Of a DNA stretch of 64,000 nt, positions 8,578 to 63,685 are shown piece after piece (the first letter of the stretch is position 1; the number at the start of each line of letters is the position of its first letter). The DNA is from Perna viridis (Eukaryota): contig CM074517.1 in the NCBI GenBank assembly GCA_037379345.1, positions 36,332,001 through 36,396,000 on the forward strand, written 5' to 3'. Both the position numbers and the translations under genes were made by a program. Under the pieces are notes generated by a model. That model saw only the letters and a list, made by a program, of their open reading frames with translations. It was not told where the DNA came from and did no database searches.

Positions 8578-9739
8578 TTTATTTAAGAGATACATTTTTT
8601 TTCTCGTATGAAGCTAGAACTATGACAATGTGACGGTGAACACGGCGAAGATCACCTGGGTTATATAGCGTATAACTACACATTAATGCAAATCATATGC
8701 GAATATTAAATACAGAAATTACGAGTGCAAGAAGTCGCTACACTATTAGCGACTTAAAAATCCTAATTTTAGGGATTTGACACATCGCATCTACCTCAAA
8801 GAACTTGAGATAAAGGATACTACAGGCACTGTGAAGTCAGCCTCATATCTTGACCTACACTTAGAAATCAATGGTAAATAAAAGCTATTGACCAAACTTC
8901 AGACAAACGTGACGACTTTACATTCAGAATTGTCAACTTTCCTTTCATCTGTGTAACACCCCTTCAGCACCTGCGTATGGAGTGTTCATATCACAACTCA
9001 TACGTTATGCCAGAGCTTGCCGAAACTGCATAGACTTTTTGTATCGCGCTAGAATTAGTCTTCTGGAACAGGGTTTTGTTGCTATATATTAATAATAATA
9101 TACAAGATTGAAGTCATCACTACAGAAGTTTTGTGAACGTCATCTTGAACTGAACTCGTGGATCGTTACGGTGTATCCATCTGCGCCATGAAAACTGTTT
9201 TGTTCAACGTGTCATAGTTCTTTCCTCTTTAGTCTACCCCGGACTTTTTATGAGCAACTCGGAGGGTGCTTACCCTACCGGTGCACCTGGTCCATGCTCC
9301 CAGTTTTTAGTATAGTCCGATTTGCTCATTTGCTTTTGTTGCTTCGTGTGTATGATTTTGGTTGCTTTGTGTTCTTTGTTGTGTGTGTCTGTTTTCCATG
9401 TCTGGTCTTTGCCCTGGATTGCATTCTCTGGATTACCGCTATAACCTTGGTTCCCTTGATAACTCGTGCAAACTTCAGATTTATTTACAAAAGTAAGACA
9501 TGATCCCGAAAATCCCTGAAATAACTATGCTCCTGTGTAATAATGACAGAGAAGTTTTATTTTATACTTCTTTTATTAATAAATATATATATATATAATG
9601 TATACATAACTAAAAAATCATTTCAATATAACAGATCACTACTTTGTAAAATCAAAACTTATAAATGCTTCGTGTCATACTATCTTATATTGAAATTTAC
9701 TACTCTTCAGATGATACCCCGCCGTATATAAATTTAATG

Positions 9740-10173: not shown

Positions 10174-13100
10174 TTACAACGTATTCTCCATTACAATTGA
10201 ACCTTTCGAGTTAGATTCGGGAATACCTAGATATTTTTCGTTATTATCGGTCTTTATCGTTGGCTCTGTCTTCTTACAACACGTTCCAAGTATTGAATTA
10301 GATTCAAATTGGAATGTTGGTAAAAATGGAATGTATGAAAAACATTTGTATTTTCGGAGAAACGGCATAATATAGGGAATATCATAGGTAGCTGAATGAG
10401 TCTTTTCCTTTTCCTCACAAGTCGATAGTTGGTTTCTCCATTTGATTATTCCCCTTTCTTCGTCTGTACCTGCGATCAAAATGTATACGTACATAGAGAA
10501 CGAAATGGACTTTTAATATAATTAATGTTGTGAAAAATTACATGTAATTTTAAGAGTTGAAAAATCAAAATTATAAAAATCATAAAAAATAAAGGAGTGT
10601 ATAATATTGAAACATGCAACATTTTTATTATACACGGCGTTTGGTATTGGATGATAAAAAATGATTTTTTTTTCTGAAAAATGTTTCAAAATTACTTGAA
10701 GTTCTTGAAATGGTGAAAGTTTGTCAAGTCACATGACACTACGATATAGGATAGATGATAACCACTTGATAGGCGAAAAAAAAACCAGCATCCTTTTATT
10801 ATATAAAGCATCATATATATTGAAATATATCTGTCTTACCTGGCACAGTGTTGTCCAATATAAACCCAAGCACACCACCAACAAACATAGCTGTACTTAG
10901 TAAAACTGTCAAAACTTGGTCAACATCATGACTGCCTTAAATACATAATGCAAAAAGTTTTATACTTGATAAGAATATTTTGTGCAAAGGGTTCCAAACA
11001 ACATGCATGTTTGATAATTAAAGATTGTTTTTAATATTTGAAAAACTAACTTTGGGACAGTTTACAATTCATGAGCCAATCAGAAGACTCATTACTAATC
11101 AAATTAAATAATTATCAGATAAATCACTTAACCAACGGACCATGTTAAAATTGCCCATCGTGAGAAAAAAATCAGAAGGGAATAAAATTTAAAACTAAAT
11201 AAATACATGTATCACTGAACACTGAACTATTGCATGAATATGTAGATATACCTGTCTGTATTGCATTTTTGTTCTCTTCTAGATATTTTGGAACCATCAA
11301 TCCTATTAGCAACGAAGAACCAATAATGCAAAGATTTCTTCCAGAGGACAAGTCTACAAATTGTAGGGTTGATAGACCGACTGACGTAACCATACCAAAA
11401 CTCAACACAACTGTTCCACCTAACACCGGATCGGGAAGCATAGTTAAAACAGCTCCAATTTTTCCAAATAGTCCACAAATCAGAAAAATGATACCTGCAT
11501 ACTGGAACACACGCCTGCTGGCGTTCTGAAAATAAAAATTAACTACCGTTAATAAGCAATTAACATAACTGTATTAAACTTCCAATGCATGTTTAAAACT
11601 CATAACCAGTAAAACATTTTGAGATGGTAAATGGTCATATCAAGTACTTGTGGTAGCGTTTTTACAAATGCTTCTTAATTTTTTTTTCAGGACAAGAGTT
11701 CTAGATCTTTACAGCTTCGGGTACAAATTCATAAACAGATTCAGTTGATGTTCTAACTGTAATATTTCCTTACTTAAAGTATCCTACAATTGCATAACAT
11801 AAAGACTTCCTTGGTATATCTGCATTTAAAATGCTTACAGAGCTACATGTAGGCTTTTTACAAGTTCATATATAATAGGAGCTGTGCTCAATTAATCAAA
11901 ATACAATGTGCTTACCTTTGTAAAACCGATAGCACCAACATTTTGAGAGTACGAAGTTGTAGCACCACCTGATCCAACAGCACCAGAAAGAATACTACCA
12001 AAACCCTCCATAGCAATACCGCGGTTAATAGCATGTGCAGGAGGAGGCGGAGCTAATGATATTCTAGCACATGCGTAATAGTCTCCTACAGATTCAATGA
12101 TTGATGTGAAAGTGGCTGCCATCATTGCCATGTAGCTCGCTACACTTACTGTAGGAACTCCCCATTGACCTTAAATTGCAAAAAAAAAGATATTGTTTGT
12201 GTTACACCTTGTAAATCCTCCCAGTTTTTTTGTGTAAAACATATAAAAAATGATACATGCATCATATTCACCTGTGTTAATAATACTTTGCATAATAAGT
12301 GTCCATTGTCTATTGAACAGTATAGCTTTCTGAATAAAACAATTTATTACATTTCTTATACCCGTCTATGCGCCTGATTTCATATTCTAAATAGATTTCT
12401 ATTTTTGCAAGAATATACAAATCTAATACTTAGTATACAAAATAATAATAACCAACAAATAAAAACAAACAAAACAAAACAAAACAAAACAAAACCAAAC
12501 CAAACCAAAAAAAATCACTTGCCAATCTCAAAGAAAAATACCCCGGATAGATCTACAATCAAGCTTGATTAGTAAACGACCCATTTTTCCATCGTTAAAG
12601 AGTCAAAGCTCCGAACATATATTTGATAACGTCATCTTACTTCACATGATAATGTAGAGATTGTGATGTTTAACATAAACAAAAGAAATACAAATTTACA
12701 TAGTCCTTTAATTTCAGCTTCTGTTGCGTACATTTTATGTTTTATCACTATGCAATCATAGAGTTGATGACTATCTTTCTCTCGTTTGCACAAATAGCAT
12801 GAAAATAAATGCACTGCAGAAAGATACATTTGTGTTAGTCTGTTTTGTGGTGGTCTTTATTTGTGTGTATTACTTTATGTTGAAAGATAAGTTTTTCGTT
12901 ATCTGTTCTTATGGTATTCACATCTTTGTCTTGTCCAGGAATTTGTACGTTCGTATCTTTAGTATTGATACTTTGTCTGTTTGTTGAGACCAATAAGAGA
13001 TAAACTTCTAAAGTTTATCGTTAAAGAATAATTATGTTTCCTTTAAGTTTACCTTTCTACAGAAATTTGTGTAAAAAAATCAACTTCAGACGTTTTCTAA

Positions 13101-30721: not shown

Positions 30722-32434
30722 TGTTGCATTTGGATGGGGGTCACCCAAAACACTGGTTTTATTTATTTTTCTGGTAGCAAAGTTAACCTTGGTAGCAGGT
30801 GAAGTGTGGCCGAACATGATATGGCCCTGGTTTGTTTAATATATATAAGGCACTATTTTGTTTAGTCTAAGTAAGAGAGACTTAAATAAATAACAACTTA
30901 TTGATACACGAATATCAATAGTAAAGCAATTTTCATACACGCTTGAATAATCCAAGGACCCTCCCTAAATGTATGTATGACGGGAATGGGAGGTAAATAT
31001 TTAGGTCTTGTATTCAGGTCAGGTCGGGTGACTACGTCATAAATCAATTATGTATGTAAATTAGTAGGCGTACATCTAAACTAGGTATCCACTCGGGTGC
31101 AATACAGGTACAGGTGGAAGTCATAGGTCATGTATAAATGATTTATATAGAAAATGCCCGGTATGGTTCCTTGGTCTCCGAATCTGAATTGTCGTCTCCG
31201 TACTCGTAATTTATTATCTTTAAACAATCCTAATTTCGGGGATTTGATACATTGCATCTACCCAAAAGAACTTGAGATAAAGGATACTACAGACACTGTG
31301 AAGTCAGCCTCATATCTTGATCTACACTTAGAAATCAATGGTAAAGGAAAACTATTGACCAAACTTTACGACAGACGTGATGACTTTTCATTCAGAATTG
31401 TCAACTTTCCTTTCATCCGTGGCAGCATTCCTTCGGCTCCTGCGTATGGAGTGTTCATATCACAACTCATACGTTATGCCAGAGCTTGCCGAAACTACGC
31501 AGACTTTTTGTATCGCGCTAGATCTCTAACAAATAGGTTTCTGGAAAAGGGTTATGTTGCTACAAGATTGAAGTCATCACTACAGAAGTTTTATGGTCGT
31601 CATCATGAACTCGTGGATCGTTGTGGTGTATCCATCAAAACCATGAAAACTGATTTATTCAACGGGTCATAGTTTTCCTTTCCTCGTTTGTCTACCCCGG
31701 ACTTGACTTTTTATGAGCAACTCGGCGGGTGTTTCTAGAAAAGCAGAGGACGCTAACTCTACCGGTGCACCTGGTCCATGCTCGCAGTTTTTAGTGGAGT
31801 CCGAGTTGCTCATTTACTTTTGTTACTTTGTAAATATGATTTTAGTTACTTTATGTTCTTTGTTGTGTTTGTCTGTTTTCCATGTTTGGTCTTTGTCCCT
31901 GGATTACATTCTTTTGATTACCGCTTTAACCTTGGTTCCCTTGATTACTCTTATATCAGACTCCGCATCTCCACTCTGGTGTTGTGGCGCGCCATTGAAT
32001 GGACAAATAAACAATCCCCCGATTTCAGGGCCTCACACTGTGGAGTTCACTTCCGAAAATTAGATAATGGCGCCGAATGTAGATAAACTAAATATCTACT
32101 ATTATGAACGGGGTAAAGGGCCTTAACACATACTAGTTAGTAAAAGGGTAACAATATATCCTTTAACGCTATTATGAGGATAAATCTGATGGGGTTAAGA
32201 AATGTGGGTCAGCCGAACTAAAACAGGGACTGGGAAACAGTGAGGACAAACCATGCCCTAAACGACTTTCCCCACAATAGCATACAATACAATAAATACA
32301 ACAAACAACAATAGATAAATGTCTATATCAACACGTGGATGATAATGATATCAGCATACACGAACAATAAAAGCTTGCCAGCTTGCAGGTACTGAATAAC
32401 ATAGCTTTCTGTAGCCTAATCCTACAACGTTACA
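30722..32434 (-). repeat. 5' LTR (about 970 bp native plus a PLE insertion)
   Basis: Aligns with 21540-24044 and adjoins the PBS. Confidence 0.9.
31215..31950 (+). mobile_element. Naiad-type Penelope-like element, best-preserved copy, nested in the 5' LTR
   Basis: Intact RT C-terminus LSLNNPNFGDLI…[18 protein letters not shown]…PAYGVFISQLIRYARAC…DLFNGS*, with no C-terminal GIY-YIG. Apparent TTAT duplication (31211-31214 / 31951-31954). The empty site is visible in the other LTR (~22051-22060). Confidence 0.9.
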
Positions 32435-35874: not shown

Positions 35875-37526
35875 TCAGACAATTGTTGTTTGTGATCGTC
35901 TCATTACTACTGTACTTCGCACTAAAGGTGTCGACTGGGACGAACTTGCTATTTGTTCATGATAAACTGGCTCATTCATCTGTGAATCCGCTTGATGGTA
36001 GATGGTCTTTTCATTTGTGCGACTATCCCCTCTCAGTAGTTCCGTATTCAAATTGTTGATACTATCATATTGTCGTCCATATGGCGACCCATCGGGGCAT
36101 TCATACACAGCCGAAGCTATTCGCGGACTGTTATGATCCTGATGTCTTTTGCCTTCCCTCTTCTCTGAGATATGACCAGGACAAATGTACACATCCTTCC
36201 TGTCGAGTTAAATAGTTGAATAGTTAGAAACAGTGCCACTCAAAGTAAGTTAACGAGTCAAATAAACAAATTTACATTTTGTCTGCGCATGATATAGATG
36301 AAAAATACAAATGTTTAATTTTGCTAAGTACTACATAATTAGCCATAGTATGTTTAGAGGTTCATTTTTCTATATTTAAAAATATACTATATAGTATTTT
36401 TTTCATGTCTGCTACGAATGTTTCTTACCACAAACTAATCGACGTCAAGTAAGACAATAGTGGAAATACCTTTCCTTATTTCCCGTACAACACTGCTGTT
36501 TCCTAAAATTTGTCTTGTTCTTGTATGCCTTGTCTGGTTTCCATCGTATAATACCAAAATCATTCTTGTATTATTACTCGTTTTCTAGAAAAGCAGAGGA
36601 CATTGACCCAACCGGTGCACCTGATCTTTGCTCCTTTTTTTGGTATAGTCCGAGTTCATTTGCTTTTGTTTCTTTGAACGTGTTATTTCCATGTCTTAGT
36701 TGTGTGTGTGTCTGATCTTTATTCCTGGATTATATTCTTCAGATTTCTACTTGAATCTTAGTTTCCTTATTTACTTTTACAATCAGGTATTTTCTTCCTT
36801 ATATCAGTTTTTGTTTTCGATCTGAAAATACAGAAACTAAAATATTGTTGTTGTGCGTTTATGTTGTGGCCAAAAAATAATTCTAAGATTGATGACAAAC
36901 CTTCTTGTGATATTGATCAGTAGCGTCATGGTTTTTACAGAAACGACGAGACTTGCAACAGCTACCACAAGACCTCCTTCAAAACAAAATATTTCTTTAT
37001 TCATGCAAACATTTGTATAGTTTTGTTCACTCCCAACTCATACAGTCATCATAATAGTTTAATATCATTTCTTGTTATATTTACTTTAAATACGCTATTG
37101 TTTTTTACAAAGATATTTTGGTATACCACAGCCTATCAGTCGTTCCGTCGGTTCTCATGGGGAATGAAAACAACGGAATTGCAATATTTAAAGTAAAATA
37201 TTTTTATTTACTGAAAATAAAAAAGCCCCTTTTTATCTTTTTTCTTTGTATGTTTTCCAGAATTATTGTGTGAAGGGGCGGGCGTGTCATGTGTTGTAAC
37301 GCAACACATTGTTATTTATTCTATTGGTGTATAAATGAAAACTAAGTATTTGTGTACGAAATATAGCGTTGCACTTCAATGCATACTAACTGGATATTAT
37401 TACCACTTGCAAAGGATGAATTACTTTCAGGTGTACTAATGCTTATGAATTGTGAGCGAGTATTCAATAGTTTACTGCACATTAATATTCAACGTTCGTC
37501 GCAGTGTTGATTGCGTTTTTTTCTTG
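35875..37526 (-). pseudogene. Receptor paralogue D: stalk, TM and Tyr-rich tail exons; ectodomain decayed
   Basis: The 76-nt phase1/phase2 TM exon 36901-36976 (GGLVVAVASLVVSVKTMTLLINITRR) has the same size and phases as in paralogues B and C. Tail exon 35875-36199 is open. Candidate stalk exon 37404-37526 has an in-frame TGA (37489-37491). Only stop-ridden Cys-containing remnants lie upstream (~38.4 kb, ~40.5-40.8 kb). Confidence 0.55.
36580..36775 (+). mobile_element. Naiad-type PLE 3' fragment (degenerate)
   Basis: TTTTCTAGAAAAGCAGAGGAC…ACCGGTGCACCTG. Confidence 0.75.
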
Positions 37527-39872
37527 CTAAAATATTTAGACTAATAGTTTACTGTACCAACAGACACATTTACCAGTGGAAGTTTTAATTATGAAAGTAA
37601 CTGATGCTATAGATTATGTTACTTGCTGTTGTATCAAACATACCAACAACAAGCGCACAAATAATATCCAGATCCATCAGAAAACCTCCGGCTTCCAACC
37701 AATAACTACGTTGTAAACAAAACAAGGAAAATACTGTAAACAACAAAAGCAGAATACCTTATAACTGTTAGTATTGAAAACGTTAATACCTATATCAATT
37801 ATGAAAATGTAGGCAACGATTCATGACGTACATGAGTAGAGTATTTTTAACTCCTCACCTTGTATTGGTATGTCATGAACACTAACCAAATAAAAACGTA
37901 TACAGAAAGAGCTAGATTACATCTGTATCGAGTGGAGAGAGAGAGAGATATACCTACAATGTTGCCTTCAAGCGAGCGTAGGTGACCACCCCCTTACTGT
38001 TAGGAGTTTTCTCAAACTTTTGATGAGTCTACATTGCAGAATAAAACACAGAAATGTTCAATATCCCTTTTAGGGTAACAAAATATCGACAACTTTTGTT
38101 TTTGGAGAGTATATATGATGTTTTGTATTTGATATAATAAGATATAGTATCTTGGAGTGCTTTCAAGATACCCTTGTGTAGCTTACCAGTTTGATGTTTT
38201 TATGATTTTAAACGCACTCACGCCAGATAAAAATAATTCAGCAAAAAATAAGTTTTACCTTTATATTCGTGAAACATTTTTAAAAGCAATGCTTAATTTC
38301 CCTTGTTAGCCTACCTTGCCGGTGTATCATACCTGGTAACTTTTAGCATTTATTTACCTGAAAGGTGAATACACCTTCTCTTTATCAGGGCCTACTGACA
38401 AAGATGTAGCAGAATTTCATTCGTACATTGTGTACACGTATCTTTGCTATCAGTTCATTTCAAGTCATTGTGGTTTAGAGGATCTTAACTGTCATGTGTG
38501 GATTGCAAGGCATCATTGTTTATGAAAGAATGTACCGTTTGTCTTTTCACATACAAGTCGATTTAAATTGGGTTTTGAGTATCAATTATTAGTTTGTTTT
38601 AAAAGATAAGTCAGGATGTGATTCATGCATGTCCAAAACTTTCTTAATTAGCTTTCATTTCAAATGCAGAACCATTTACAGGCCACAAAACATGTCTAAG
38701 GTTGTCATTCGTTTTTTGCAAGTGTCGAGATAAAAAAAATATAGATTGTGTATGAAATTGCCACTAAACACGAGTTATCATTGAAAAGGTTAACTTTGGT
38801 TGATGGTTTTTCTTAAAAAATACAAATCTGAATAAATAAAGTGCTATCGTTACGTAACAATAAAGACCATAAAGGCATCGTTTGCTCATATGTTTTTCTA
38901 AAACATTAATTACTTATTCCATAAACCGTATCAGAATTTTTCATGGGCTGGTTCTTACTTAATATTTCTTCAAATGCCTAAAGCTTTTACCTTAAATCTC
39001 AACTCTATACCGTTATTGTATAACAGTATTGCATCCTAGCTAGACCTATATAATTTACCCTTATGCATGAACTGAACCAATATTGCAAACCCTATATTGC
39101 ATATCCTTTGTCACATCCAATCATGTATAAGCAACCAGAAAAAGTGAAAATCGAATACATTCATGCAAATTATTATCAGGGGCATAACGCCAGGCCGTAC
39201 CTATTTATTTTGTTGTAACGACATGTCGTACTTTATATTCTTGTCAATAATAATAATAAAGTATGGTATTTTACTCGATAACTAAACAAAATTAAACAAA
39301 ATGGTTCCTTTGATCCTAAATGCTGAAGATAATAAATATTTTTGATATATGTGTGGCGTATTCATTCAGTATTTTTCAAAAAATATTTTGCTTTGCAAAC
39401 TTAAACATACATATTTATTTCACGTCCTAGAGAAACGCACAGTAAAAAAAAGAAAAAAAAACCACATTTACCTTATATACTTTTAACATCCATCTAATTT
39501 CAGCAAATGAGGAAATAATAAAAGATATCAGCGGATGTTTCTCGTTTTCGAAAAATTTATTAGTGTTTCCTCTTCGTACTGTCATTTCAAGTGGAAAAGA
39601 ATTTGGATAAACCAATACCTTTCATTACATTTGTTAAATTGATTAAAACCAATTGTTACTAAAATTAAAAAATGAACGGAAATTATATCATATAAATAAT
39701 ATATACATATTTACACATACACACACATGTATATATATATCAGCTAGAAGTGAATTCCGAGAAAGACAAAAGTGATGCAACTAATCTTTCAAAAATCCCT
39801 AAATTGGAATTTTGTTTTCGATTTCGTCAACCAATTACGGACCTGACAACAAGTAAATAACTACAATGCTAA

Positions 39873-50947: not shown

Positions 50948-53900
50948 TTAGTATAAGTCGTCGTCAGAATTGCCAAGTTGTTGCTTCTGACTTTCTTTGA
51001 ATAGTTTGTTTTGATGCAGTTCATTTTGTGACGATTTGTTTGTGTCCTGCAGACTCTGTTGACCTCTGGTAATTCCTGCGTATGACCCGAACGACGTCGT
51101 ACATTCGTCTCGAATTGGTGCTGTATTTTTATCACTTCCACTATCCTTTTTGTTTACCTGAGAGTAAATTGAATTTGATGGTTGGTAAACTTCGTCATAA
51201 GCTGGTTCTTGCTTTTTCGGTTCCGTGTCTGATTTTCTTTTCATATCCGCATTTGTTGTCGGTTTCTTGTGAACGGAAGTGTAAACTGGCGCTAAGGCTG
51301 GTTCTGAATCCAGATCAACTCCATCACCACCAAAGGCTACAATTGGTACTGGTTCTGGTGATCCCATTCTTATGTTATGATAATTAACTGGGTCATTGTA
51401 GGCATTTATGAAGTTGCTATTTTGTCTTTTTGTTCTTGGGCTTTGGGTGTTTATTCGTCGTTTTTCGTCTGTTTCTTTTTTCCTCTTTCTGAAAAGTTAA
51501 CATATAAGTATGTATAATATGAGCTGTTCGTGATTAAGGGCGCCTAAAGAAGTTTTCCTTTTCCCTTTCGTCTACCACGGACTTGACATTTTATGAGCAA
51601 CTCGGCGGGTGTTTCTAGAAAAGCAGAGGACGTTTACCCTACCGGTGCACCTGGTCCATGCTCCCAGTTTTTAGTGGAGTCCGAGTTGTTCATTTGCTTT
51701 TGTTACTTTGTATGTATGATTTTAGTTACTTTATGTTCTTTGTTGTGTATGTCTGTTTTCCATGTCTGGTCTTTTTCCCTGGATTACATTCCTTTGATTA
51801 CTACTATAACCTTGGTTCCCTTGATTACTCTTTCAATAAGGTTTAATGTTTAAGGTTCAAATACGGTGTTTTTTCATTTTTCTGAAAGGAGCATCCGCTG
51901 CGCCCTTCCTGTATCTGCTTCAAATGCTATTTTTTAAAGTTCGATCAAATTTCCTCTTCTATTATGACCCTAAAATAAGGTACATAATGTGGTTAAATTG
52001 TCATGTATGATTTTATTTATTGAGTCAAGTTGGATGTAACTATACTTATAACCCGTTAAAGCTGTGGATACACCAAACATTTCATCTTGTTTGTAATATA
52101 ACAACACTGTACAATACTTTGGAGAATATCAGATAAATATCGAATAAAATCTCAACTTTGTTTTTAGGCACATGTCATTTCCGGCTTTGAAATACAGAGT
52201 TTAGTCTTGTCATTTGAATATAGTAAAAAGAAAACATTGCCAAGACCTTAACAAATAGATGAATTATTTAAGTAATTGATTTTAAAGAAAAAAAAACTCT
52301 TTTAACAAATTCCGGACGGCTTTGACTTTGGGGAAGAATATGTGTAAAGTGCTGGAAATATTGTACTGAGATCGCTTTCTTTGATGGTTTAAAGCTGGTG
52401 TGGAGAAATCAGGTTTCCGTTTCTTTTTGTAATATGAAAAAATGTGATGCAAAGAGAAAGCGAGCTAAAATATCACTGATATCGTAAATACTAGGAGGGA
52501 TATGCGTATGGTAAGTAAAAGATTTATTCTTTGTAAAAAAAATGTGCTTATAAGGAACTATAATCATAAACGAACATGACTTGCATGTTATTGTGTACTT
52601 TACCTGATTATGATGAATATTATGATAGCAATTATAGCAATGGTGACCAACACAGCTATCAAAATACCAACTATAACACCTGAAAGAAAAAAAATGTTTT
52701 AAAAATATATCAGAAGATTCGGTTATCTAGTCATTAATAAGTACAACAACCGAGATACTAGTAAGTCGAAGTTATAACATGGTGGCAGAGAACACGTAGT
52801 TAATCACAAACAAGGGTTTTAAAAGTCATATGAAGGATGTCCCTACTTATTTCTTCATAATATGAAAATAGGTGATCATCAAATTCTGAGTTTGGGGCCT
52901 GGCAAACTTTAAGGGGTCAGAATATTTATTGGTGAAATTTGTGCGTCAGAAAAAAATTCAACCACATCGGAGCAATACTATTTATTCCCATGAATAAATC
53001 TGAAGAATCTGGACTAACGTCAGAAAATTAATTTATTTTTTAGTAGGTGTAGGTCAGAATATTTATTTTCTTCGGGGCAAGAACATTTATTTCCAAAATA
53101 TGCCAGGCCTCCCCCTCAAAATCAAATGATTACCTTCCAACACATTGACCGATAACGAGAAACATAAATAATGCTATATTTAAATTTGCCAGAAATGCGC
53201 TTACACATTAAAGTTGTGAGTTTTCATTTGAAGTCAGAGTAAACTATTTTTTATACAAAAGTGAACAATTTCTGTGTACCTATACTTGAGGAACTCTCTG
53301 CTACTAGATTTTGTGGTTGTGTCGTTCTCTCAACTGGAGGTTCTGTCTGTCCGTTTTCATCATAACATTCAATGTCTGTAGCTGTACCAACTACATAATA
53401 AAAGTAAGAGTATATATATTTTATTTGTTTTTATAACTTCCGTTTGGGAATATGAATTTTCAGGTAAGTTGAAATTTATACAGTTGCAATTTTAGCATTT
53501 AAAGCCCCAAAGTTTGTCGAATATTAACATTTTTTATCAAAGGAACCCCTAAATATAAACCATGTCTAAATCTGATCCCACTAACCAGAAAATTCTTCTT
53601 ACTACAGGGAGTCAGTTAAATATACAAACAAAAATAATGAGAGAACAGGTCAATTGTGTACAGTATACAGGTTTTTGGTTTTGACAAAGATCCGATAATT
53701 TAATTCGGGGTGTGGTTTTGACAGGGCTCCAGTCAGTTAATACAAGGTTTGTTTTAGCCAGGACTCCGACAATTCAATTCGGGGTTTGGTTAAGGCGGTG
53801 ATCCGATCCGTTAATTCGAGGATTTCGTTTAGACATTTTTCATTGACTTCCTTCAATAAAAATAAGCAAGTAGAATGAAAGCCTTACCTAAGCAGACAAA

Positions 53901-56900
53901 GTGACGACGTGTGTTACAGTCAGAAGTTTTAATTTCTGTTTCGTCTTTATCTACATTTATATACTGACATTCTGAATTCTGAAGTGTCGATTCTGAAATA
54001 TGAAATAGATAGAAACAATTTTGGTTTTGTAGATAATTTTATACGCCCAAGAAAAGTTCATATTAATTTTGTTATAATTGTTAATTTTGCGACAAACCAC
54101 TGTTCATCCGTCCGTCCGTCCATCCGTCTGTCAACTCGAATACTATCGATAACTCAGATTTTAAATGACTTTTGAGAGGAAGCCCCCTTTTTCCGATATC
54201 ATGATAATTTGAATGTTACAAAATGTAGATGAGTGTGTTTTTTTTTCTTACGCGCAGCTGTTTATCATTAAATTATATTTTGACATGGTAAAGTTACGTC
54301 GGTTTGCAACGTGTAAAAAAACTCGGAAAGGAATAGGTAAGTAGATTTAAAACTAATAAAATCAAATTTAATTATTTACATTTTATGTAGCTTTACAAAT
54401 TTGACTTCTGAATCACTGGAGATGTTAAGATTTTGTTCATTTTAATGTTAATTGTGGTTTATAGTCACTATGTTAAATTTACTTCAATACACATGAATTA
54501 TCGGAATTATGATCCATTTTTCCAATGATGAGCAAATTCTTGTCTTTACTTTTTTTTCTTATTGTACACATATTCAAGCTGTGCTGTCAAGTGATGAGGT
54601 GGTTTCATGATTCATTCATCGTCTGATATACCAACGCTTATCATAGTTTGTCATGACATTAAACAAAACTTAAAAATAATTATATACATTAGAAGTTATT
54701 AAAAGTGAACTTTTAGGTTCATTGTATAAAAGCGTACTCTTCAACGGGTTGTGTCGGGAACACCGCAGCGGAGTCATCCATGGCCGGGTCGGGGATATCT
54801 CAGTGAATGTTTTCCGAGCCGACAAATCGCATTTTGTGGTAATAAAAATACAGCACTTCAGAAAAAAAATTTAACAATATTTTAATGTTCAATCAATGTT
54901 TTTTTGAATTTTTTAAGTACGACTTCCTAAGCACCTTTTCTGTACACTGTTAAATGTAAGTTCCCTCCACAGGGTTCTTTAGAGTTTCCTGGACATGGTG
55001 TAGTATCACATCCTCCGGCAGGGCTTGCTCCTACTAATCCCGTGTAACAACTGCATTTTGTAGTCTGAACAGAAGAATAAATGCATAAGAATGAAATCCA
55101 TAAAGTATTGTTTATGTCTTTTAAAATAAATAAAAAAATGTCCTGAAAACTCGTAGTACAATAGAAGGAGAAAATGTATTTTGATTTTAATTGGTATCAC
55201 AGTGTATTGTGATTCAGAGTTAACATTGTACTGTACATGTACACGTATGTAACTCTGCTTCAACAATACGTGAATCATCTGAGAATATTTATTTGGTTAC
55301 TTCCTTGTTTTGCTTACAAATTATAAACGATTGTAGAATGGAAAAGTAGTAAAATGTATTTCTTTAAAAAAAGAAAGAAAAGGAACCTCACTTGCACTCC
55401 TAAGAAGATAAATCTGTTCTCTGAACAAAAGGATGCGCAGTTTGCCAAATGATTATTGGAAAAATCCTTAGTAGACTCAGGTTGAAACAGATGAAAGCAT
55501 CCTGTAACAAAATAGTGATAACTTATAAGATAGTATACATAGTACATGCAGGTAGGAACATGTAAAATAAGCGGTTAAGTCCCATAGTTTTGAGTTTTTA
55601 GAATAAATTCGTTTAGGTCTTTTTGTCGTTTGTGCATTTAATTTTAGCTGTGCTAAATATTTGTATCTTATTTTATATGTTTTACTATTTTAGTGACCAA
55701 CATTACAACACGACATACGACGTGAAATGTTTGGAGTTGTAAATACCTAAGTGAAAGCTTCTTAACAACACATTTATTGCTGCTTGGACTGGGGTAAAAT
55801 GAAGATTAATACGATATTGTTATATGTACTAACCATAGCTCTGGTACCACGGACGGCTGGTAAAAGCTTCAGAAACACCACAATGTCTGACAGCATCCAG
55901 TAAGTCTGTACCGTAGTCCAGTAAAGTTCCTTGGATTGATTCACAATATAATTCAGCGTCAGTTTGAGTCTGGCTGTTCTTAAATACTTTGAAGGTGGCA
56001 AATGACTCTATACGAAAAAGAGCGAAGACAGAACTTTACTCAGTTTCTTGTTCAACACGTGTATTACATTACCTAAGCGTCAGGTTGTCATATAATATTT
56101 GTGAACTAGAAGTTTTTGTTTTAGTTTTAAATTCGTTATTATCGCCCTATAGCGAAAATGTCTTTTGTGCTTTTTTTTCTAGGGACATGTGACGAATCGC
56201 GGTCAACGTCAACAAATGAGGGGAGAGCGAGCTTGAACAAAGGAAGGGGGGAGGGTCGTCGTCGGTCGCTGGCCTCTGGTGCCCGAAAAAGGCCGACGAC
56301 GTCAATTGCACCCCTGTAACTTCTGACTTTCTTATTCCAAATAATTTTTGTTTAACTCTATCTGCCGCTAAAAAATATCTATTTCTACATACAATCCTTT
56401 CCCTTGAGAAGATGGATTGTACTTAAGAGGAATGAATACAAATAATGGTAAGAATAACAGTAATAATAAAAAAATCAATGATCAATAAGTGATTCTATAA
56501 ACAATAAAGTAATCAGGGGCGAATCTAGACACTTTGAAAAAGGGAATGCCAGCCGGGGTCCCTCATGTGCTAGGACATTTTTTACCATTTTTTTTCAATT
56601 TTACGCATGAAAATGTCAAATTTTACAAACGAGAGGTGCCAACCCCCTGCAACCCCTATCTGGGTCCGCCACTGGTGAAAGTATCATGGTACCAGTATAA
56701 AGAAACTAATCCAATATTTCAGCTTTCTCTAAAACAAACGACCACTCCTAAAGAAATATATAACTCAAGATTTATCTCTGAAAGTGCATTCTATCCCTGT
56801 TTAATCATGCCATAAAAATACAATTACACAACGATCTCGTGTTTGAATTGCAGATTGTTTAATGGTGTGTTTTTATCTTGTTATCAATGCCATTATGAAA

Positions 56901-58726
56901 ACATTACAAACTTAATTTGTTTTAATTTACACGAACATCCATAGAAGGAAGTCCTGAAGGGTATACAAGATTGTTCTTGGCTTAATGCCTGTCTGTCTGG
57001 CATGACCGCTTGATATTCTAAAGCAAACACAATTAAATGTAGAAACACGTTCGCTTCATTACATGCCAGACATGGTTTTTATATCTTACCTCGACCACGA
57101 TAATCGACATTATAAATTTTCAATAAATATAGGATTTTATTTAATCACAATGGTCAAATAACTTCAGAGAATTTCTACTTAAAAAAAATAGAAATTATCA
57201 TATTTTCATGGACATGACAATCGTTTCTTGTTTTTATCACCTTGATCTTTGTCTCTTGACTTCTCAAATTTACAATATTCCTCTTAGAACACACAGTTTT
57301 CATCTGTTTCGTGAATTAATATATTTTTTAGAAATTAGATCTGTTGAAAATAAAATGACATTTGAGGTAGAGCACAAATAACACTGATAATTTAAACTAC
57401 AAAAAAATGTATTTAGAAATGAATGTTGGCCAAACAATGTTCTTGATGCTCCTCCTCCAACTGGTCAAAAGATTCCCATAAATCTCATCAATGACCTTCG
57501 AATACAAAGCACACACAATTTGTATAAAACTAAGTGATTTGTATACCAAAAAGAGAAGCCTGTGGCAACGTTTGTGTAACGGGGTGTGCTATCAGTACTT
57601 TTATGTTTTATCACAAAATTTCTACCATTAAAATAATGTATTTACAACAAAAACAGAGGATTGATAAACCTAAGGCAATATCAAATGTAAATATTGCGCA
57701 TCATTGTCCTTGATACTTAAAGTTAAAAAGGGGCAAAAGGAGAAAAAAAATGGATTAAAATGTTAAGACCTTTCGTGAATTCTGTTAATGTAATACCAAT
57801 CATTTTGCCATTTCTCTCATTCTATGTTTTACACATTTTTGTGTGAGTCTACATTTTTCCTTTTCTATCATATGTTTAGGTAACTAATTTCAAGCGGCAT
57901 AATATTAACTTCAATATTTAACTTATAATAAGCAAAAGAATTTAATTATAGTAAGCCAACTAGCCCATAACCATACTGTACGATCCTGAAATTAACCCAG
58001 TAATAAATTTACTAGAATTGCATAAAAAATGCTTCAACAATACAGGAGTATGGAGATATTTATTTATTCGTCGAATTTGGTTATGGAATCAATTGATAAT
58101 TAAGGGCTATAATAGTTATAGATATATACCCGATAGCCAATACACAAAAATATGTCATTAGAATCGGAGACAGAATCAAACATTATAACACACGGGAACT
58201 TAAAGAAAACACACCCACATAAAAAGAGAGAAAGAATGTGCACACAAAACAAAAAGTATAGGTTAAACTGAAAAATAGGAGCATGGACTATGTGCATCGG
58301 TATAGACTTCTGCATTTCCCAAAACACCTGATTAGCTGTTTATCTCTTGTCCGGCTTTATGATAGAGAATGAACATTTTTCAAATTATAAAGAATATTGT
58401 TGCTATCATCTAATCTATTTTAAATGCAAGTCGAATATGCCAACTAATTCATATTATTGGAATAATTAGTTGATTTTGGCAGAGTATAATACCGCATATT
58501 AAGAAGTAAAATAATTATTTTTTTTAAAAACTGCAATAGAATAACAAATTGAAAAGTTTCTTAGAAGTAGTTAAGAGCGAATACACAAAAGCAGTAACAA
58601 ATTGTACTTTGATGAAAACAAATACTGATGTCTAGGGTATACATGTCTGGAAAAATTGATATGGATGAATGTCTAAATGAACTAACCTTTTTGGAGAAAC
58701 ATAAACATCAGGAACAACCTCACCAT
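50948..58726 (-). CDS. Receptor paralogue B: split C-type-lectin-like + WSC ectodomain, TM, tyrosine-motif-rich tail (~428 aa)
   Basis: Exons 58687-58726 (signal MVRLFLMFMFLQK), 55834-56007, 55392-55501, 54935-55064 (CSC…CDTTPCPGNSKEPCGG…VY), 53888-53992, 53280-53390, 52604-52679 (TM) and 50948-51488 total 1287 nt in frame. Confidence 0.85.
51552..51831 (+). mobile_element. Naiad-type PLE 3' fragment
   Basis: Complete 3' UTR of the family. Confidence 0.9.
52870..53135. mobile_element. Probable MITE
   Basis: AGGTGATCAT…GGGCCTGGCA at the left is mirrored by TGCCAGGCCT…ATGATTACCT at the right. Confidence 0.45.
53670..53835. repeat. Degenerate ~36-bp tandem repeat (4-5 units)
   Basis: GGTTTTGACA.G..TCCG…TAATTCG.GG recurs. 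Confidence 0.6.
54037..54190 (+). mobile_element. Helentron/HINE-like 5' end
   Basis: TTTTATACGCCC followed by a (GTCC)n microsatellite at ~54107-54131. Confidence 0.5.
56514..56674. mobile_element. Non-autonomous DNA transposon (CAG(G/T)GGCG-type TIR)
   Basis: CAGGGGCGAATCTAG … CTGGGTCCGCCACTG. Confidence 0.55.
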
Positions 58727-60030
58727 ATTGTTTTTCCTTGCTTTTTAAGCAAAGACTTGAAAATCATTTACGCAAAATCATCACGTCGCATTGTACTGTT
58801 ACGATACGAAATGCAAAACAATCCGAAATTTACTCGGGGCTACCTCGTATTTGTTGTCGTATTATCTACATTTTTTCTGGTCACTCTTCTGTGTCAAAAA
58901 AAGATAGCATCTTTCCCTTAACTTAATAGAATATTTTAAAAGTTATTTGGCCATATTGTAATAATGTTTGCGGGGAAAGTTTTGAACATGGACGATTTAT
59001 CTGTCATGGACTTTGGAAAAACCATAATTAATAAAAAGCAGAGGTTCATGCAGTTAAAACTTTTTAAAAAATAATAAAATCTTCTTTGAAAAAAAAAATC
59101 TTAAAAGCCGATTGTGATAAAAAGAAAACAATTTTCTTTATTTTTATTTATAAACAAAAGTGCAGTATTAAGTATCACTGTCGGTTAAGGGATCACGTGT
59201 TAAAAAAAAACAATATCGCCATTATACATAATACAACCAGACAGCAGAAACATCGATATACCGGCAACTAACTAACAGACAATACAGGAACTGTAAACAG
59301 TAAATTATCTTTATGTGTTTTATTTTGAGTGTTTGTGTGTGGTCTTGTTTTTCATACTTGTAATTGTATATTTTGTTGTTGTCTGTATTTTGTATCGTCC
59401 CTATTTCCTATTATCACTGTCTTTGGATTCTCATGTATCTGAGTTGTCCTGTTTCGAAGCTTCACTATAATTTTCGTCGATACTCGGAACAGATAGGAAG
59501 TCTATGGTCTATAGAAGTATTCTCCATGTACGGTTTTATACTCGGGGAAAAAATCCAGAAATACACAGATAAACGAAATATGTCGATAAAGGCGGTCATA
59601 AAATTATTGAAGAGATGAAACCAGTCGGTCAGTTATATGTATACATATAACGCTATTTTCCTGCTGTTCCGTACGTGCAAGACTCGTAAGAGTAGTCTAG
59701 GACTTTAAAAAACCCTTAGTTTACTGCTGTTCTACAGTGTACATAAAAGAACTATTAAGAAATTCGGTGAAAGAACGACACAGTCTCTCATTCGAATGTA
59801 TGATAATATTACGTAAAAAAGTATAAAGACATGGTATCCTTGTTCTTTCACTGATTAATGATAAAAATGTAATACATTTGGAGTTTAAGCGAGACTCGGT
59901 AAAATTTGTAGAATCTAGACAGTAAATGGAAAAAGATCCTCATCTTTTACGTCGTATTCAGTAGCTGTAACTAGTTGTCTGTTTCTTTCAACTGGTTTGG
60001 AAACCACGGGATGTGCGATTGTAAGACTAG

Positions 60031-63000
60031 TTAAAAGACAACTTTCCTAAAATTAGGAAAAAAAACTAACATATTAACATTTAACCGAAACAAAATATAG
60101 CTTATACAGCCAAAGTCGTAGAACATCACTGAAATTATTTAATAAGTTTAAACAGTTCATTTGTATTTTTTCTTGTTGTTTTCCCATTGAAGTCTGTGTT
60201 TTTTTTGTTTGTTTTTTTTAATATTTTTAATAGTAAAATGCAGTTAGTGAATTGTGTAACCAATTGATTTTAAGGTTTTCTTTTACGTTTGGTTATTTTG
60301 TTTTGCCTGCACACATAAAGAAGGCTACCAGTATGAATATAAAGTGAACATACCTCACTCTGAAACATACTGTTACAAGAACGATGACTACTATGGCTAA
60401 AACAACCAACGATATACCCAGAATAATGGCTGAAATGTAAGCGACAAAAGACAAGTGGAGATTAATTTGACTGAATACCATAGAAACTAATTTTTCCCAT
60501 TCTTAGCAGACAAATGAATCAGATGCTTTTAACAAACGCATATGATAGAGGTTAACAGATAACAGAAAGAAAAACATGTAAAACTTTAAAAGGAAAGAAA
60601 ACATACGGAAAATTTATATTAAATGAAATAAAGACAGTGTGTATATTTTTACTGTATAAAATGTACACAGTACCATAGGGTTTCAATCGAGGTTCATTTA
60701 CTGTCTTTAGCTAGCTAGGTGTGAGTATTAACGTTTGTGTTTTTTACAAAAGATATAGGTACTGAGTATATTCCTGTATCAGAAAAATAAATTTGACTTA
60801 CCTAATTGTTTATCACTAGATAAGGTTAAGCTGGTGGCAGTTGGGTCTGTTGTATTCAGTGTGACAGTTTGTGTTGATGATTCTGTGGAATTTGGTGAAA
60901 TTGTGTATGTTGTTGTCTCACTGATGCACTTTACAACGTCAATATTATCATCTAAAAAAGAGACAAAAGCGCCATGGACAAAATAATTAAAATAAGACCG
61001 AATGGGCATATAAAATGCGGAAACAAATACACAGTGTAAAACGTTTCTTATCAAGCATCATTATTGCATTTTCGTAAATATTTAACTGAAGAATTTCGAG
61101 AAAATACGTTGTTTCAGACAACAAAAACAATATCGTAAGGTGAGATTGAGGATCAATTTGTTATTTTCTAGAACATAGAAAAACTAAATAATTGAATGTG
61201 TGAGTACCAATGAAACGTTCTTTGAATGAAAATTAAGAGATAGTTCATTGCCTTGTGAAATACAAAGGTCAACCCCTGTGAAAATGAGTACTACACCATA
61301 CCTAACATGGATCACTTATATTCTTATGTGACAAAAAACAACTACATCTACATCTGCACAGGGATAGATATATCGGGCATTTAATCATTTGACGTTTATT
61401 GAACGTAATTTTAGAAATAACATCAACTCTTACCTGTTTTACATATAAAGTTCCATTTCATATTACAGTCTCCTCGCATAATATCAAAATGATTTTGAGC
61501 TATTTTGATGTACTGACATTCTGAGTTTGATAACAAAGTCTCTGAAAATACAATACACTATTTCACTACTGTAACTACATATAACATTTCTTAGAAAATT
61601 CAATGATATAAGGTCTTTATATCAATATCGGAATTGATCGACGAGTATATGCAATATTAGCGACATCTTACGGGTTTTTTTTTTGTTGTTATTGTTTTTT
61701 TTTCTAGTACTTCCACTACGTTACAAAAATAAATATTTGTGATTGCAGAGTCAAAGAACAATAAGGCTGTCTCTTAAAATATTCCATTTGGTATAATGTT
61801 ATGATTTGAATCAGATAGCTTACCTTTCTTATAAATAATAACTTGATTTATGCCACATTGTTCATAAGTGTTTCCAGGGCAATCTATTGCATCACACTGT
61901 CCTGGGATACCTATTCCAACTAGTTGGTCATAGCATAAACACTTTGTGGACTAAAATAAGCACTATTGAATTATCTAAAACGCCAAGAATTATCCTAGCG
62001 CCTCCTCAAGCCATGTAATTCGACAAACTAAACAAATATGAAAAAAAAAATGCCAAGCTCATTAAAAAGTCGATCTGACCAAATGAAATGGGACAGTTAT
62101 GTCAAAAAGTAAAAAGTATTACAAAACACCCGAAAGAACGTTCAAATTTAAAAACATTGAGTCAAAAATATCACGTGAAAGCCCTAACGCTTCGCACGGC
62201 AGTAGGGTAATCGTAACATTTTGGATTTGAATAAGCCAATTTCTGTAAACAAAAACCCTAATGTTTCAAAGAATTTCAACTCTGTACTAAAATAGATTAT
62301 GATACATATTTCTTGCGATATATTTACTTATTCCCGTTTTTTTTTTTGTTTTGTTTATTTTTTTTTTAATTAATTAATTCATTACCTGAACACCAATATA
62401 ATTTGTTGACGTCATAGAACAGAATTTGGCACAGTTTGCCAAATGGTTGTTAGTAAAATTCTTTTCAGTTACTGTCTTCAAAGGGTGAAAGCAACCTATA
62501 ATATTCAATAACCGATATACATGAAAAGATCTTTACAAATAATAAATAAACCTTTTGTTTTTTTAAGACGTAAGAATGTAAGTACTTTTCGACATACCAT
62601 CGAACTAGCGAACCATTCTTAGGCGCACACTGTACAATCGTTTCTTGGTAACTTCATCTCATTATACAATTTTATTTAGTCTTGTTCAGCAAAATTTCGC
62701 CGTATGAATAAACATACATAAACAACTTTTCCAAACAGAAATCTAGATTATTAATGCTTACACATTTGTAGTAGAAACCAAAGTTTATAATTAGTATAGG
62801 TTTCTGATATAAGTTGAATATTATAAAAATTAAAAATGTCTACTGCTTGGATTTGAATCGATTGCCCGATTATTAAATGAGACAACATTACAATGTACAT
62901 GTCAATTGGAAAACTCCAAACTCCAAATACTCACCAATCGGCAGAAACCATGGAGCATGAGTAAGGACAGAACCTACTGAGCATGCGACAGCTGCGTTTA

Positions 63001-63685
63001 GAAAATCAGAATCATATTCCATCAGATGACTATCAGCATTGTCACAATACAACTCAGCCTCGTTCTTACTGCGCTTGATTTTATACACTCGTATCGTAGT
63101 TAATACATCTAAAACATTAGACATGTCATTATCATCCTAGCATTGTATTATAATTGTAATTGGATATACAGAAGAGTATATCTTAGTGTTCATCGTTCTT
63201 TGGGGTTTGAAATCTGCCATTATAAAAATGTTTGAGCATTTGCTGTAGTAACTTTAGGTTGGAATGGTGTAATCAGAGCGATATTTTATATTCTGAAACG
63301 AACAAGACGTTGCATGTAATGACGTCCAGTAAGCACCGTCACTGCTTTTATTCTAATTATTAGAAACACACTTTGTTGAAACCTAGTAATATTTTTTTCC
63401 AGAAGAACCTCTCTAAATTAACAACTATATCAACACGAGTAAAAATATTAGAAAAAAATGGAAATAAAATAATACAATGAAAAACACTAAAAGATTGTAA
63501 AAAGTGAATACCAAGAGACAAGGACAAAGGCAAGAAACATACAGAAATAACAACAAAAAGCAGTAGATAAGACTTTACTTTTTGTTAACGAACAATAAAT
63601 GTAGTTTAATCAGAATCTTCCTACCTTTTACAAATAAAGATACTACTCCAAGATTAATTAACAGTATAAAAAATGTGCCATCCAT
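60031..63685 (-). CDS. Receptor paralogue C: split C-type-lectin-like + WSC ectodomain, TM, very short tail (~273 aa; ~310 aa with the alternative donor)
   Basis: Exons 63625-63685 (signal), 62935-63108, 62386-62495, 61824-61950, 61434-61541, 60802-60951, 60354-60429 (TM) and 60031-60046. Exon sizes 174/110/76 match paralogue B and 127/108 match paralogue A. The NF.NNHLANCA.FCS block is shared with B. Confidence 0.85.

What the first reader, a model, noticed from the sequence alone, without database searches (positions are those of the whole stretch)
35875..63685. Tandem cluster resembling an invertebrate paired-receptor system
Seen: three intact paralogues with the same 8-exon and phase plan but very divergent ectodomain sequences, stalks of 37/50/118 aa and unrelated tails. 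A has a long basic tail, B a Tyr-motif-rich tail and C almost none; relic D has a TM Lys. Established: vertebrate paired receptors (Ly49, KIR, Siglec) combine similar ligand-binding domains with inhibitory, activating or decoy tails in birth-and-death clusters. Inference: a convergent glycan-sensing receptor family for immunity, particle sorting or symbiont recognition that I cannot match to a named family.
Basis: partly seen in the sequence, partly recalled or inferred. Interest (0 to 1): 0.78.

Follow-up and report, generated by a model that had tools for sequence, protein, structure and literature searches.

The report
Conserved mussel lectin-like receptor gene cluster
A row of same-strand mussel genes encodes surface receptors that share an unusual sugar-binding-type head but carry different inner tails. 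The row is old, stable and under purifying selection, so it is not a fast-evolving paired immune-receptor system.

Summary
The three minus-strand genes A, B and C are real and intact. They share eight exons, intron phases 1,1,0,1,1,1,2, stalks of 118/37/50 aa and unrelated tails.

Two corrections. "Relic D" is an intact three-exon gene of 143 aa for a headless membrane protein whose transmembrane Lys is conserved in Mytilus. A further full member, U, lies just beyond the window's right end.

The order U-C-B-A-D, followed by a permease gene, is the same in Mytilus. The genes are one-to-one orthologues (41-48% identity). dN/dS within Mytilus is 0.17 for B and 0.23 for D.

The head is a C-type-lectin-like fold with a WSC domain nested inside it. 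Earlier notes of this scan describe the same nesting on this window and on other pieces of this genome.

In B's tail, YDEV, YHN, three further tyrosine sites and a 15-residue block are conserved. The two ITIM-consensus strings are not. C and U have near-absent tails and no charged transmembrane residue.

The paired-receptor hallmarks fail: heads are not near-identical, no ITIM is conserved, and there is no birth-and-death turnover. This is an undescribed, mussel-restricted, subfunctionalised receptor family. Ligand and expression remain untested.

The parts
63625..63685 (-). Gene C exon 1 (start codon, signal peptide)
   Evidence: ATG plus hydrophobic stretch, donor of phase 1 with score 9.0
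62935..63108 (-). Gene C exon 2 (front half of the C-type-lectin-like fold)
   Evidence: AG/GT, phase 1-1. The profile of this exon finds the other copies at E 1e-27 to 1e-29.
62386..62495 (-). Gene C exon 3 (first half of the WSC domain)
   Evidence: 46% identical to the B exon; phase 1-0
61824..61950 (-). Gene C exon 4 (second half of the WSC domain)
   Evidence: Profile hit at E 1.5e-22 in the own genome; phase 0-1
61434..61541 (-). Gene C exon 5 (back half of the C-type-lectin-like fold)
   Evidence: 46% identical to the B exon; phase 1-1
60802..60951 (-). Gene C exon 6 (Ser/Thr-rich stalk, 50 aa)
60354..60429 (-). Gene C exon 7 (transmembrane segment, 76 nt)
   Evidence: Phase 1-2. Transmembrane segment plus tail are 76% identical to Mytilus C, against 49% for the head.
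60031..60046 (-). Gene C exon 8 (last five residues and stop; inferred)
   Evidence: Best acceptor candidate. It gives an end RKVVF that matches RKVVL of Mytilus C.
58687..58726 (-). Gene B exon 1 candidate (13 codons + 1 nt; inferred)
   Evidence: ATG, hydrophobic, donor AAG|GTTAGT of phase 1. Same size as exon 1 of Mytilus B, and the full-length alignment starts at residue 1.
55834..56007 (-). Gene B exon 2
55392..55501 (-). Gene B exon 3
54935..55064 (-). Gene B exon 4
53888..53992 (-). Gene B exon 5
   Evidence: Weak Pfam Lectin_C match to the end of the profile, E 0.059.
53280..53390 (-). Gene B exon 6 (stalk, 37 aa)
52604..52679 (-). Gene B exon 7 (transmembrane segment, 76 nt)
50948..51488 (-). 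Gene B exon 8 (180-aa tail with 8 Tyr)
   Evidence: Motif conservation. Single copy in the genome.
47832..47880 (-). Gene A exon 1 (signal peptide)
46914..47096 (-). Gene A exon 2
46173..46279 (-). Gene A exon 3
45535..45661 (-). Gene A exon 4
   Evidence: Pfam WSC match to the end of the profile, E 0.0035.
44757..44864 (-). Gene A exon 5
43703..44056 (-). Gene A exon 6 (Thr-rich stalk, 118 aa)
   Evidence: An alternative acceptor at 44119 would give 139 aa.
43302..43389 (-). Gene A exon 7 (transmembrane segment, 88 nt)
41189..41756 (-). Gene A exon 8 (basic tail)
   Evidence: Conserved blocks against Mytilus A.
37644..37677 (-). Gene D exon 1 (11 codons + 1 nt)
   Evidence: Best match to exon 1 of the M. 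trossulus gene, donor TTG|GTATGT of phase 1
36901..36973 (-). Gene D exon 2 (transmembrane segment with Lys, 73 nt)
   Evidence: Phase 1-2. 65-71% identical to the Mytilus exon, Lys conserved.
35875..36199 (-). Gene D exon 3 (cytoplasmic tail and stop)
   Evidence: The acceptor matches phase 2. 38% identical to M. trossulus, E 4e-15. Single copy.

Best explanation
The region is most of an old, syntenic cluster of five same-strand genes: U (outside the window), C, B, A and D. They belong to a family so far seen only in mytilid mussels. U, C, B and A are type I membrane proteins. Each has a signal peptide, then a head in which a WSC domain is nested inside a C-type-lectin-like fold, then a Ser/Thr-rich stalk of variable length with one conserved Cys, then one transmembrane helix, then a paralogue-specific tail. 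D keeps only the equivalents of exons 1, 7 and 8, so it is a headless membrane protein with a Lys in its helix. Shown here: the anatomy, the orthology, the synteny and the purifying selection. Inferred working model: the duplicates were subfunctionalised long ago. The same kind of head, probably binding glycans through the exposed WSC module, is wired to different outputs. B is the tyrosine-signalling member. Ligand-driven clustering would lead to phosphorylation of its conserved YDEV (Nck-type), YHN[IV] (Grb2-type) and YxxPhi sites, and from there to actin remodelling or uptake. That makes it an activating or phagocytic/adhesive wiring, not an inhibitory one. A signals through a different, conserved, basic Ser/Thr-rich tail. 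C and U are nearly tail-less and act as co-receptors or decoys. C's unusually conserved transmembrane segment suggests a partner inside the membrane.
For: Gene models and phases. Whole-genome searches: searches find head exons of this type only in this cluster plus one locus 4.1 Mb away. Relatives: searches find them only in Mytilus among named sources. Orthology: full-length best hits go A to A, B to B and C to C at 41-48% identity. In the tree, A groups at 100/100, C at 95/96 and U at 96/95. Synteny: U-C-B in M. galloprovincialis, C-B and A-D-permease in M. trossulus, B-A-D-permease in M. californianus. The permease exons lie at about 20.3-20.4 kb in the window. Selection: B dN/dS is 0.17 overall, 0.22 in the head and 0.10 in the tail, at dS 0.375. 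D dN/dS is 0.23. Head: Pfam WSC is above its cut-off in four of six Mytilus members scanned. A family profile against PDB matches Kremen WSC at positions 74-154 (E 3e-4), C-type-lectin fronts at 19-47 (E 5e-3) and C-type-lectin backs at 146-196 (E 9e-4). The exon-2 profile hits many multi-Lectin_C proteins. The AlphaFold model has mean pLDDT 71, with most of the head at block means of 79-93. It aligns to C-type lectins at Z 9-10 over residues 17-190, and to yeast Wsc1 and Kremen WSC at Z 10.2 over residues 61-153. Tails: conserved B motifs, A blocks and the C end are.
Against: Only one of five AlphaFold models was confident (71 against 46-49), and the first attempt failed. Pfam Lectin_C never reaches its cut-off. 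No ligand is known, and in Kremen the WSC domain contacts proteins. Tyrosine motifs are short and could equally be YxxPhi sorting signals. In the head-only tree the window's B is not resolved from the B+C clade. Pairwise dN/dS cannot exclude positive selection at a few sites.
Confidence: 0.6

Rival explanations
1. One reading: a convergent paired-receptor system. B would be inhibitory through ITIMs, the short-tailed members activating or decoy, and the whole would evolve by birth and death under pathogen pressure.
For: One head type carries long, short and different tails in a tandem array. B and C are sister paralogues and neighbours. The window's B has two ITIM-consensus strings. Mytilus has a member V that was not found in this genome, and a predicted soluble isoform of U.
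Against: Heads are only 27-43% identical. One-to-one orthologues and conserved gene order hold across genera. dN/dS is 0.17-0.23. One ITIM-consensus string is a window-only insertion, and the other loses its -2 hydrophobic residue in Mytilus. The conserved tyrosines are of the activating/adaptor type (YDEV, YxN). C and U have no charged transmembrane residue.
Confidence: 0.1
2. A receptor-plus-adaptor module in one cluster. The tail-less C and/or U would associate within the membrane with the headless, Lys-bearing D, which would supply the tyrosine-containing tail, much as activating NK receptors use DAP12.
For: D is intact, conserved, under purifying selection and always sits at the end of the cluster. 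Its Lys is conserved in three species. C's transmembrane segment plus tail is 76% conserved, against 29-45% in A and B. D's exon sizes and phases equal family exons 1, 7 and 8.
Against: No acidic residue in any family transmembrane segment could pair with the Lys. D has no ITAM spacing. No interaction or co-expression data exist.
Confidence: 0.1
3. Non-immune sensors of matrix or mechanical load. The layout of WSC head, Ser/Thr stalk, transmembrane helix and tail copies the yeast cell-wall stress sensors Wsc1 and Mid2. The proteins could instead be adhesion or developmental receptors of the Kremen or polycystin type.
For: The model's WSC part aligns best to the yeast Wsc1 mechanosensor domain (Z 10.2, rmsd 2.8 over 91 residues). 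The stalk and transmembrane regions give weak Mid2 matches. Strict conservation and low dN/dS fit a housekeeping or developmental role better than an arms race.
Against: The Mid2 matches are below cut-off and driven by composition. There is no kringle or CUB domain as in Kremen, and no PKD or REJ module as in polycystin. Nothing here distinguishes this from glycan sensing in immunity.
Confidence: 0.18
4. Chance open reading frames or decaying pseudogenes with no function.
For: No RNA evidence was obtainable for this genome.
Against: All frames are open and all splice sites canonical. Orthologues are conserved, syntenic and under purifying selection.
Confidence: 0.02

Closest known systems
NK-cell and myeloid C-type-lectin-like receptor clusters (Ly49, NKG2/CD94, CLEC2/Dectin-1 group)
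   Same: Tandem cluster of membrane receptors with a C-type-lectin-like fold on a stalk. Members differ in tail length and tyrosine motifs. There is no canonical Ca2+/sugar site.
   Different: Those are type II proteins, while these are type I. Here a WSC domain replaces the long-loop region. Heads are 27-43% identical rather than near-identical pairs. No ITIM is conserved and no short-tailed member has a charged transmembrane residue. The genes are old one-to-one orthologues rather than rapidly turning over.
Kremen1/2 and polycystin-1 (animal WSC-domain membrane proteins)
   Same: WSC domain in the ectodomain of a single-pass or multi-pass surface protein. The best sequence and structure matches of the WSC part are to Kremen1. 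Polycystin-1 also carries both a WSC and a C-type lectin domain (own knowledge).
   Different: In those proteins the domains sit side by side and are accompanied by kringle/CUB or LRR/PKD/REJ modules. Here the WSC domain is nested inside the lectin-like fold and nothing else is present.
Yeast Wsc1-3/Mid2 cell-wall integrity sensors
   Same: Cysteine-rich WSC head, Ser/Thr-rich stalk, one transmembrane helix and a signalling tail. Wsc1 gives Z 10.2 to the model.
   Different: Fungal proteins without a surrounding lectin fold. The tails are unrelated.
Nephrin, EPEC Tir and vaccinia A36 type phosphotyrosine tails
   Same: B's tail carries an exact, conserved YDEV and a YxN site. Nephrin's cytoplasmic tyrosines Y1191 and Y1208 are YDEV (PMC3237483), and these recruit Nck to drive actin assembly (own knowledge).
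   Different: No sequence relationship beyond the motifs, and phosphorylation is not shown here.
DAP12/DAP10/FcR-gamma adaptors (compared with D only)
   Same: A very short outside part, a charged residue in the helix and a tyrosine-bearing tail.
   Different: The charge is Lys, not Asp. There is no ITAM or YxxM motif. By exon plan, D looks like a truncated member of the receptor family itself.

Membership tests
Paired immune receptors (KIR/Ly49/Siglec type) | [quoted passage not shown] | tested here: not met
   Head identity is 27-43% between paralogues
Paired immune receptors (KIR/Ly49/Siglec type) | The inhibitory partner carries functional ITIM(s), [SIVL]xYxx[IVL] | tested here: not met
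   There are two consensus strings in the window's B. One is absent from Mytilus and the other loses its -2 residue there. Binding was not tested.
Paired immune receptors (KIR/Ly49/Siglec type) | The activating partner has a short tail plus a charged transmembrane residue that recruits an ITAM adaptor | tested here: not met
   C and U have short tails but no charged transmembrane residue. Only the headless D has a Lys.
Paired immune receptors (KIR/Ly49/Siglec type) | Rapid birth-and-death evolution with lineage-specific expansion | tested here: not met
   One-to-one orthologues, conserved order, dN/dS 0.17-0.23
Paired immune receptors (KIR/Ly49/Siglec type) | Opposite signalling outputs from a shared ligand | not testable with these tools
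   Needs biochemistry
C-type-lectin-like domain superfamily | Pfam Lectin_C (PF00059) above its gathering score | tested here: not met
   Best values are E 0.059 (a window exon) and E 0.12 (P0057), both below the cut-off
C-type-lectin-like domain superfamily | The fold: two helices plus a beta core, closed by the front-to-back disulfide | tested here: met
   The model aligns to many C-type lectins at Z 9-10 over residues 17-190. Caveat: only one of five models was confident.
C-type-lectin-like domain superfamily | Ca2+/sugar site motifs (EPN or QPD, plus WND) | tested here: not met
   The long-loop region is replaced by the WSC domain, and no EPN/QPD or WND string occurs at the expected places in the alignments
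WSC domain (PF01822) | Pfam gathering score (27.8 bits) | tested here: met
   28.2-33.9 bits in four of six Mytilus members scanned. P0011 reaches 27.6 and P0005 has no WSC match. The window's half-domain exons alone reach 18 bits. The joined window proteins were not submitted.
WSC domain (PF01822) | Eight-cysteine pattern and the fold | tested here: met
   Eight cysteines are conserved across exons 3-4 and their junction. Z is 10.2 to Wsc1 and to Kremen WSC.
Kremen family | Kringle-WSC-CUB architecture | tested here: not met
   No kringle or CUB match in any member
ITAM adaptors (DAP12/FcR-gamma), for D | Acidic transmembrane residue and an ITAM (YxxL/I, 6-12 residues, YxxL/I) | tested here: not met
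   The residue is Lys, and there is no ITAM spacing in the tail

The most novel reading that the evidence does not exclude
The cluster is a self-contained signalling unit that converges on the vertebrate receptor/adaptor design. Tail-less lectin-like heads (C, U) would dock inside the membrane to the headless, Lys-bearing D, which supplies the tyrosine tail. B and A would carry their outputs in cis. Alternatively, read-through splicing from A's stalk exon into D's phase-compatible exons would give one head two alternative transmembrane/tail cassettes.
Probability: 0.1. Interest if true: 0.8.

Novelty: new variant of a known kind. Interest (0 to 1): 0.5.

Why it matters
Bivalves rely on innate recognition, and most of their lectin-like receptors are secreted or uncharacterised. 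This is a small, conserved and therefore tractable set of membrane receptors. They share one unusual head, a WSC domain nested in a lectin fold, and have four distinct cytoplasmic wirings plus a headless relative. That gives a natural experiment on how one binding module is coupled to different outputs. It also corrects a tempting analogy. Tandem arrangement plus different tails does not make a paired-receptor system, and the tests used here (orthology, synteny, dN/dS, motif conservation) separate the two.

Tried and rejected
- **Exon-by-exon Pfam scans of the window:** only two sub-threshold hints.
- **Word-index protein search:** with one protein and with the family alignment it found only Mytilus proteins.
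- **First AlphaFold run:** with 16 rows the mean pLDDT was 43 and the model was discarded.
- **Foldseek alone:** no match at E <= 0.001, although every top row was a C-type lectin or a WSC protein.
- **Search for decayed head exons near D:** tblastn and per-exon profiles found nothing. D is headless, not a decayed full-length copy.
- **ESM Atlas searches of the A and B tails:** only noise-level scores of 0.78-0.83.
- **Literature:** searches for WSC plus C-type lectin in bivalves, and for the Mytilus accession numbers, found nothing on this family.
- **Logan fragments in the B cluster:** they are genomic ORF calls of the tail exon, not transcripts.
- it contained typed letters in an unused branch. 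It was rerun from references only.
- **Joined models:** the spliced A, B, C and D proteins were used only inside local scripts for alignment, tree and composition. They were not sent to any database, family, fold or paper search. Those searches were done exon by exon, by reference, or with database proteins.
Full report
**Observation.** All features lie on the minus strand. Stop-to-stop frames and an all-against-all comparison show three sets of matching exons. Splice sites with consistent frames give eight-exon models for A (47880-41189), B (58726-50948) and C (63685-60031). Every modelled junction is GT-AG and the intron phases are 1,1,0,1,1,1,2 in each gene. Exon sizes nearly coincide. The heads (exons 2-5) are 27-28% (A against B or C) and 43% (B against C) identical, with the cysteines invariant. 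Stalk exons encode 118, 37 and 50 aa. The tails are 193 aa and basic (pI 9.9), 180 aa with eight tyrosines, and 7 aa.

Two exons are inferred rather than read. B exon 1 is a 40-nt candidate 2.7 kb upstream. C exon 8 is 16 nt long. Both fit the Mytilus orthologues.

**The cluster is larger than described, and D is not a relic.** A profile of exon 2 searched against the whole 723-Mb assembly finds this exon type at four places only. Three are A, B and C. The fourth lies just beyond the window's right end. There I could model exons 1-5 and 7 of a further gene, U, with the same phases. Its stalk exon and last exon are not resolved. One more member (W) lies about 4.1 Mb away on the same contig.

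Around D, neither tblastn nor per-exon profiles find any head exon. Yet D's hydrophobic exon and tail exon have exactly the family's phases, 1 to 2 and then 2 to the end. A short first exon upstream completes an open 143-aa frame.

Directly downstream of the A orthologue, M. trossulus has an annotated 138-aa gene. Its helix exon is 65% identical to D's, with the Lys conserved. Its tail is 38% identical (E 4e-15) and has identical ends. M. californianus has the same three exons, open and with GT-AG sites, although they are not annotated there. dN/dS between the two Mytilus copies is 0.23. D is therefore a conserved headless member. Its exon plan suggests a family gene that lost exons 2-6, a loss the phase-1 boundaries allow in frame. 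That origin is inference.

**Relatives, orthology and selection.** An exhaustive HMMER search with the exon-2 profile returned full-length matches only from Mytilus species. They are named "uncharacterized" or "WSC domain-containing". It also returned many multi-domain C-type lectins that match only the first half of the exon.

Each window gene has its own Mytilus counterpart over its full length, tail included, at 41-48% identity. In a maximum-likelihood tree of the heads, A, C and U each join their Mytilus group at 95-100% support. B falls in an unresolved B+C clade, and its orthology rests on the tail.

Gene order is the same everywhere it could be read:
- U-C-B in M. galloprovincialis;
- C-B, and A-D-permease, in M. 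trossulus;
- B-A-D-permease in M. californianus;
- the permease exons also follow D in the window.

Two older Mytilus gene models fuse neighbours in this same order (P0087 and P0007). For B, M. californianus against M. trossulus gives dS 0.375 and dN/dS 0.17 (head 0.22, tail 0.10). Mytilus has a further member, V, for which I found no counterpart here. Some gain or loss therefore exists, but the core cluster is stable.

**The head.** Pfam WSC passes its cut-off in four of the six Mytilus members scanned. A profile of the family against PDB sequences gives three separate matches:
- Kremen1 WSC in the middle (positions 74-154, E 3e-4);
- the first 30 residues of C-type lectins at the front (E 5e-3);
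- the last 45-50 residues of snake-venom and other C-type lectins at the back (E 9e-4).

A first AlphaFold run failed. After adding the window's and U's exons and the W exons as partial rows, by reference, the best model reached mean pLDDT 71. Most of the head has block means of 79-93, with dips to 60-74. It aligns to dozens of C-type lectins at Z 9-10 over residues 17-190. It aligns to yeast Wsc1 and Kremen WSC at Z 10.2 over residues 61-153. This supports a WSC domain nested where the lectin's long loop would be. The canonical Ca2+/sugar motifs are therefore absent, and any glycan binding would come from the WSC module.

The caveat is that only one of the five models was confident. The same nesting was noted by first readers on this window and on other pieces of this genome.

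**The tails.** Between the window and Mytilus, B keeps these elements:
- YHN[IV];
- an invariant 15-residue block, PVPIVAFGGDGVDLD;
- PVYT[SA]VHK;
- EPAYDEVYQPS;
- GSY[AV]G[IL];
- the C-terminal DDDLY.

The tyrosine of NAYND is Phe in Mytilus. SIYSQV, one of the two ITIM-consensus strings, is an insertion found only in the window. The other string, VNYHNI, reads PGYHNV in Mytilus and so loses the ITIM -2 position.

YDEV is the motif of nephrin's Y1191 and Y1208 (PMC3237483). It is the preferred Nck SH2 ligand, and YxN is the Grb2 SH2 consensus; both statements rest on established knowledge, not on tests here. So the conserved part of B's tail looks like an adaptor-docking or sorting tail, not an inhibitory one.

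A's tail has long conserved blocks and an RRLST site. C's transmembrane segment plus 7-aa tail is 76% identical to Mytilus, against 49% for its head and 29-45% for the same segment of A and B. That hints at a partner in the membrane. The B and D tails are single copy in the genome.

**Paired-receptor test.** By the usual definition the partners have very similar ectodomains and opposite signalling (PMC3533184, abstract). Here:
- the ectodomains are not similar enough;
- no ITIM is conserved;
- the short-tailed members lack a charged helix residue;
- the genes are old one-to-one orthologues under purifying selection.

I therefore do not file this as a paired-receptor system.

**Limits.**
- No RNA evidence could be obtained.
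- Joined window proteins were used only in local scripts, and all database, family and fold searches used single exons by reference or database proteins.
- The species was not determined by me.
- Function is inferred from motifs and folds only.

Noticed in passing
L005:2757-9497 (window-equivalent 66757-73497, minus strand): Fourth head-bearing gene, U, lies just outside the window. Exons 1-5 and 7 were modelled with the family phases. Its Mytilus orthologue has a 12-aa tail. The stalk exon and last exon are not resolved.
   Followed up: partly
G000:C7:32184953-32193785 (loci L010-L014): Another family member, the orthologue of the Mytilus W group, lies 4.1 Mb away on the same contig. The Mytilus W protein has a tyrosine-rich tail that includes YTSV. 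A possible second copy sits at C7:32169490-32169615 on the other strand.
   Followed up: partly
window 20255-20437 and 10855-10890; L007 about 9030-9080: Exons of a xanthine/uracil permease-type gene lie on the minus strand downstream of D. The same neighbour follows D in Mytilus. Seen by tblastx only.
   Followed up: partly
window 39857-40134, 42211-42549, 51575-51853, 31670-32083, 14185-14385, 9192-9500, 4176-4468, 21203-21559, 44257-44455, 36563-36729: A short interspersed repeat occurs in at least ten copies, in both orientations, inside introns and between the receptor genes. It accounts for many of the spurious ORFs in the window.
   Followed up: no
window 49202-49762 (+): Overlapping ORFs in three frames resemble the end of a retroelement reverse transcriptase, apparently frameshifted. 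They lie between genes B and A.
   Followed up: no
window 1446-1831: Tandem repeat with a period of about 111 nt, three to four copies, 90-100% alike at the translated level.
   Followed up: no
P0088 (M. galloprovincialis LOC143064350 isoform X3): A predicted isoform of the U orthologue lacks the transmembrane exon and would be secreted, so it is a possible soluble decoy form. It is a prediction only.
   Followed up: no
P0087, P0007 (older Mytilus gene sets): These models fuse neighbouring cluster genes into one protein: U+C+B in one, and B tail plus A head in the other. They are mis-annotations that nevertheless record the gene order.
   Followed up: yes
P0008, P0027, P0062 (unnamed assemblies): An exon-2-like sequence with the motif AWLG[KR]PWIK occurs in fragments. 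One of them carries a different, cysteine-rich N-terminal region, which may mark a further subfamily with another architecture.
   Followed up: no
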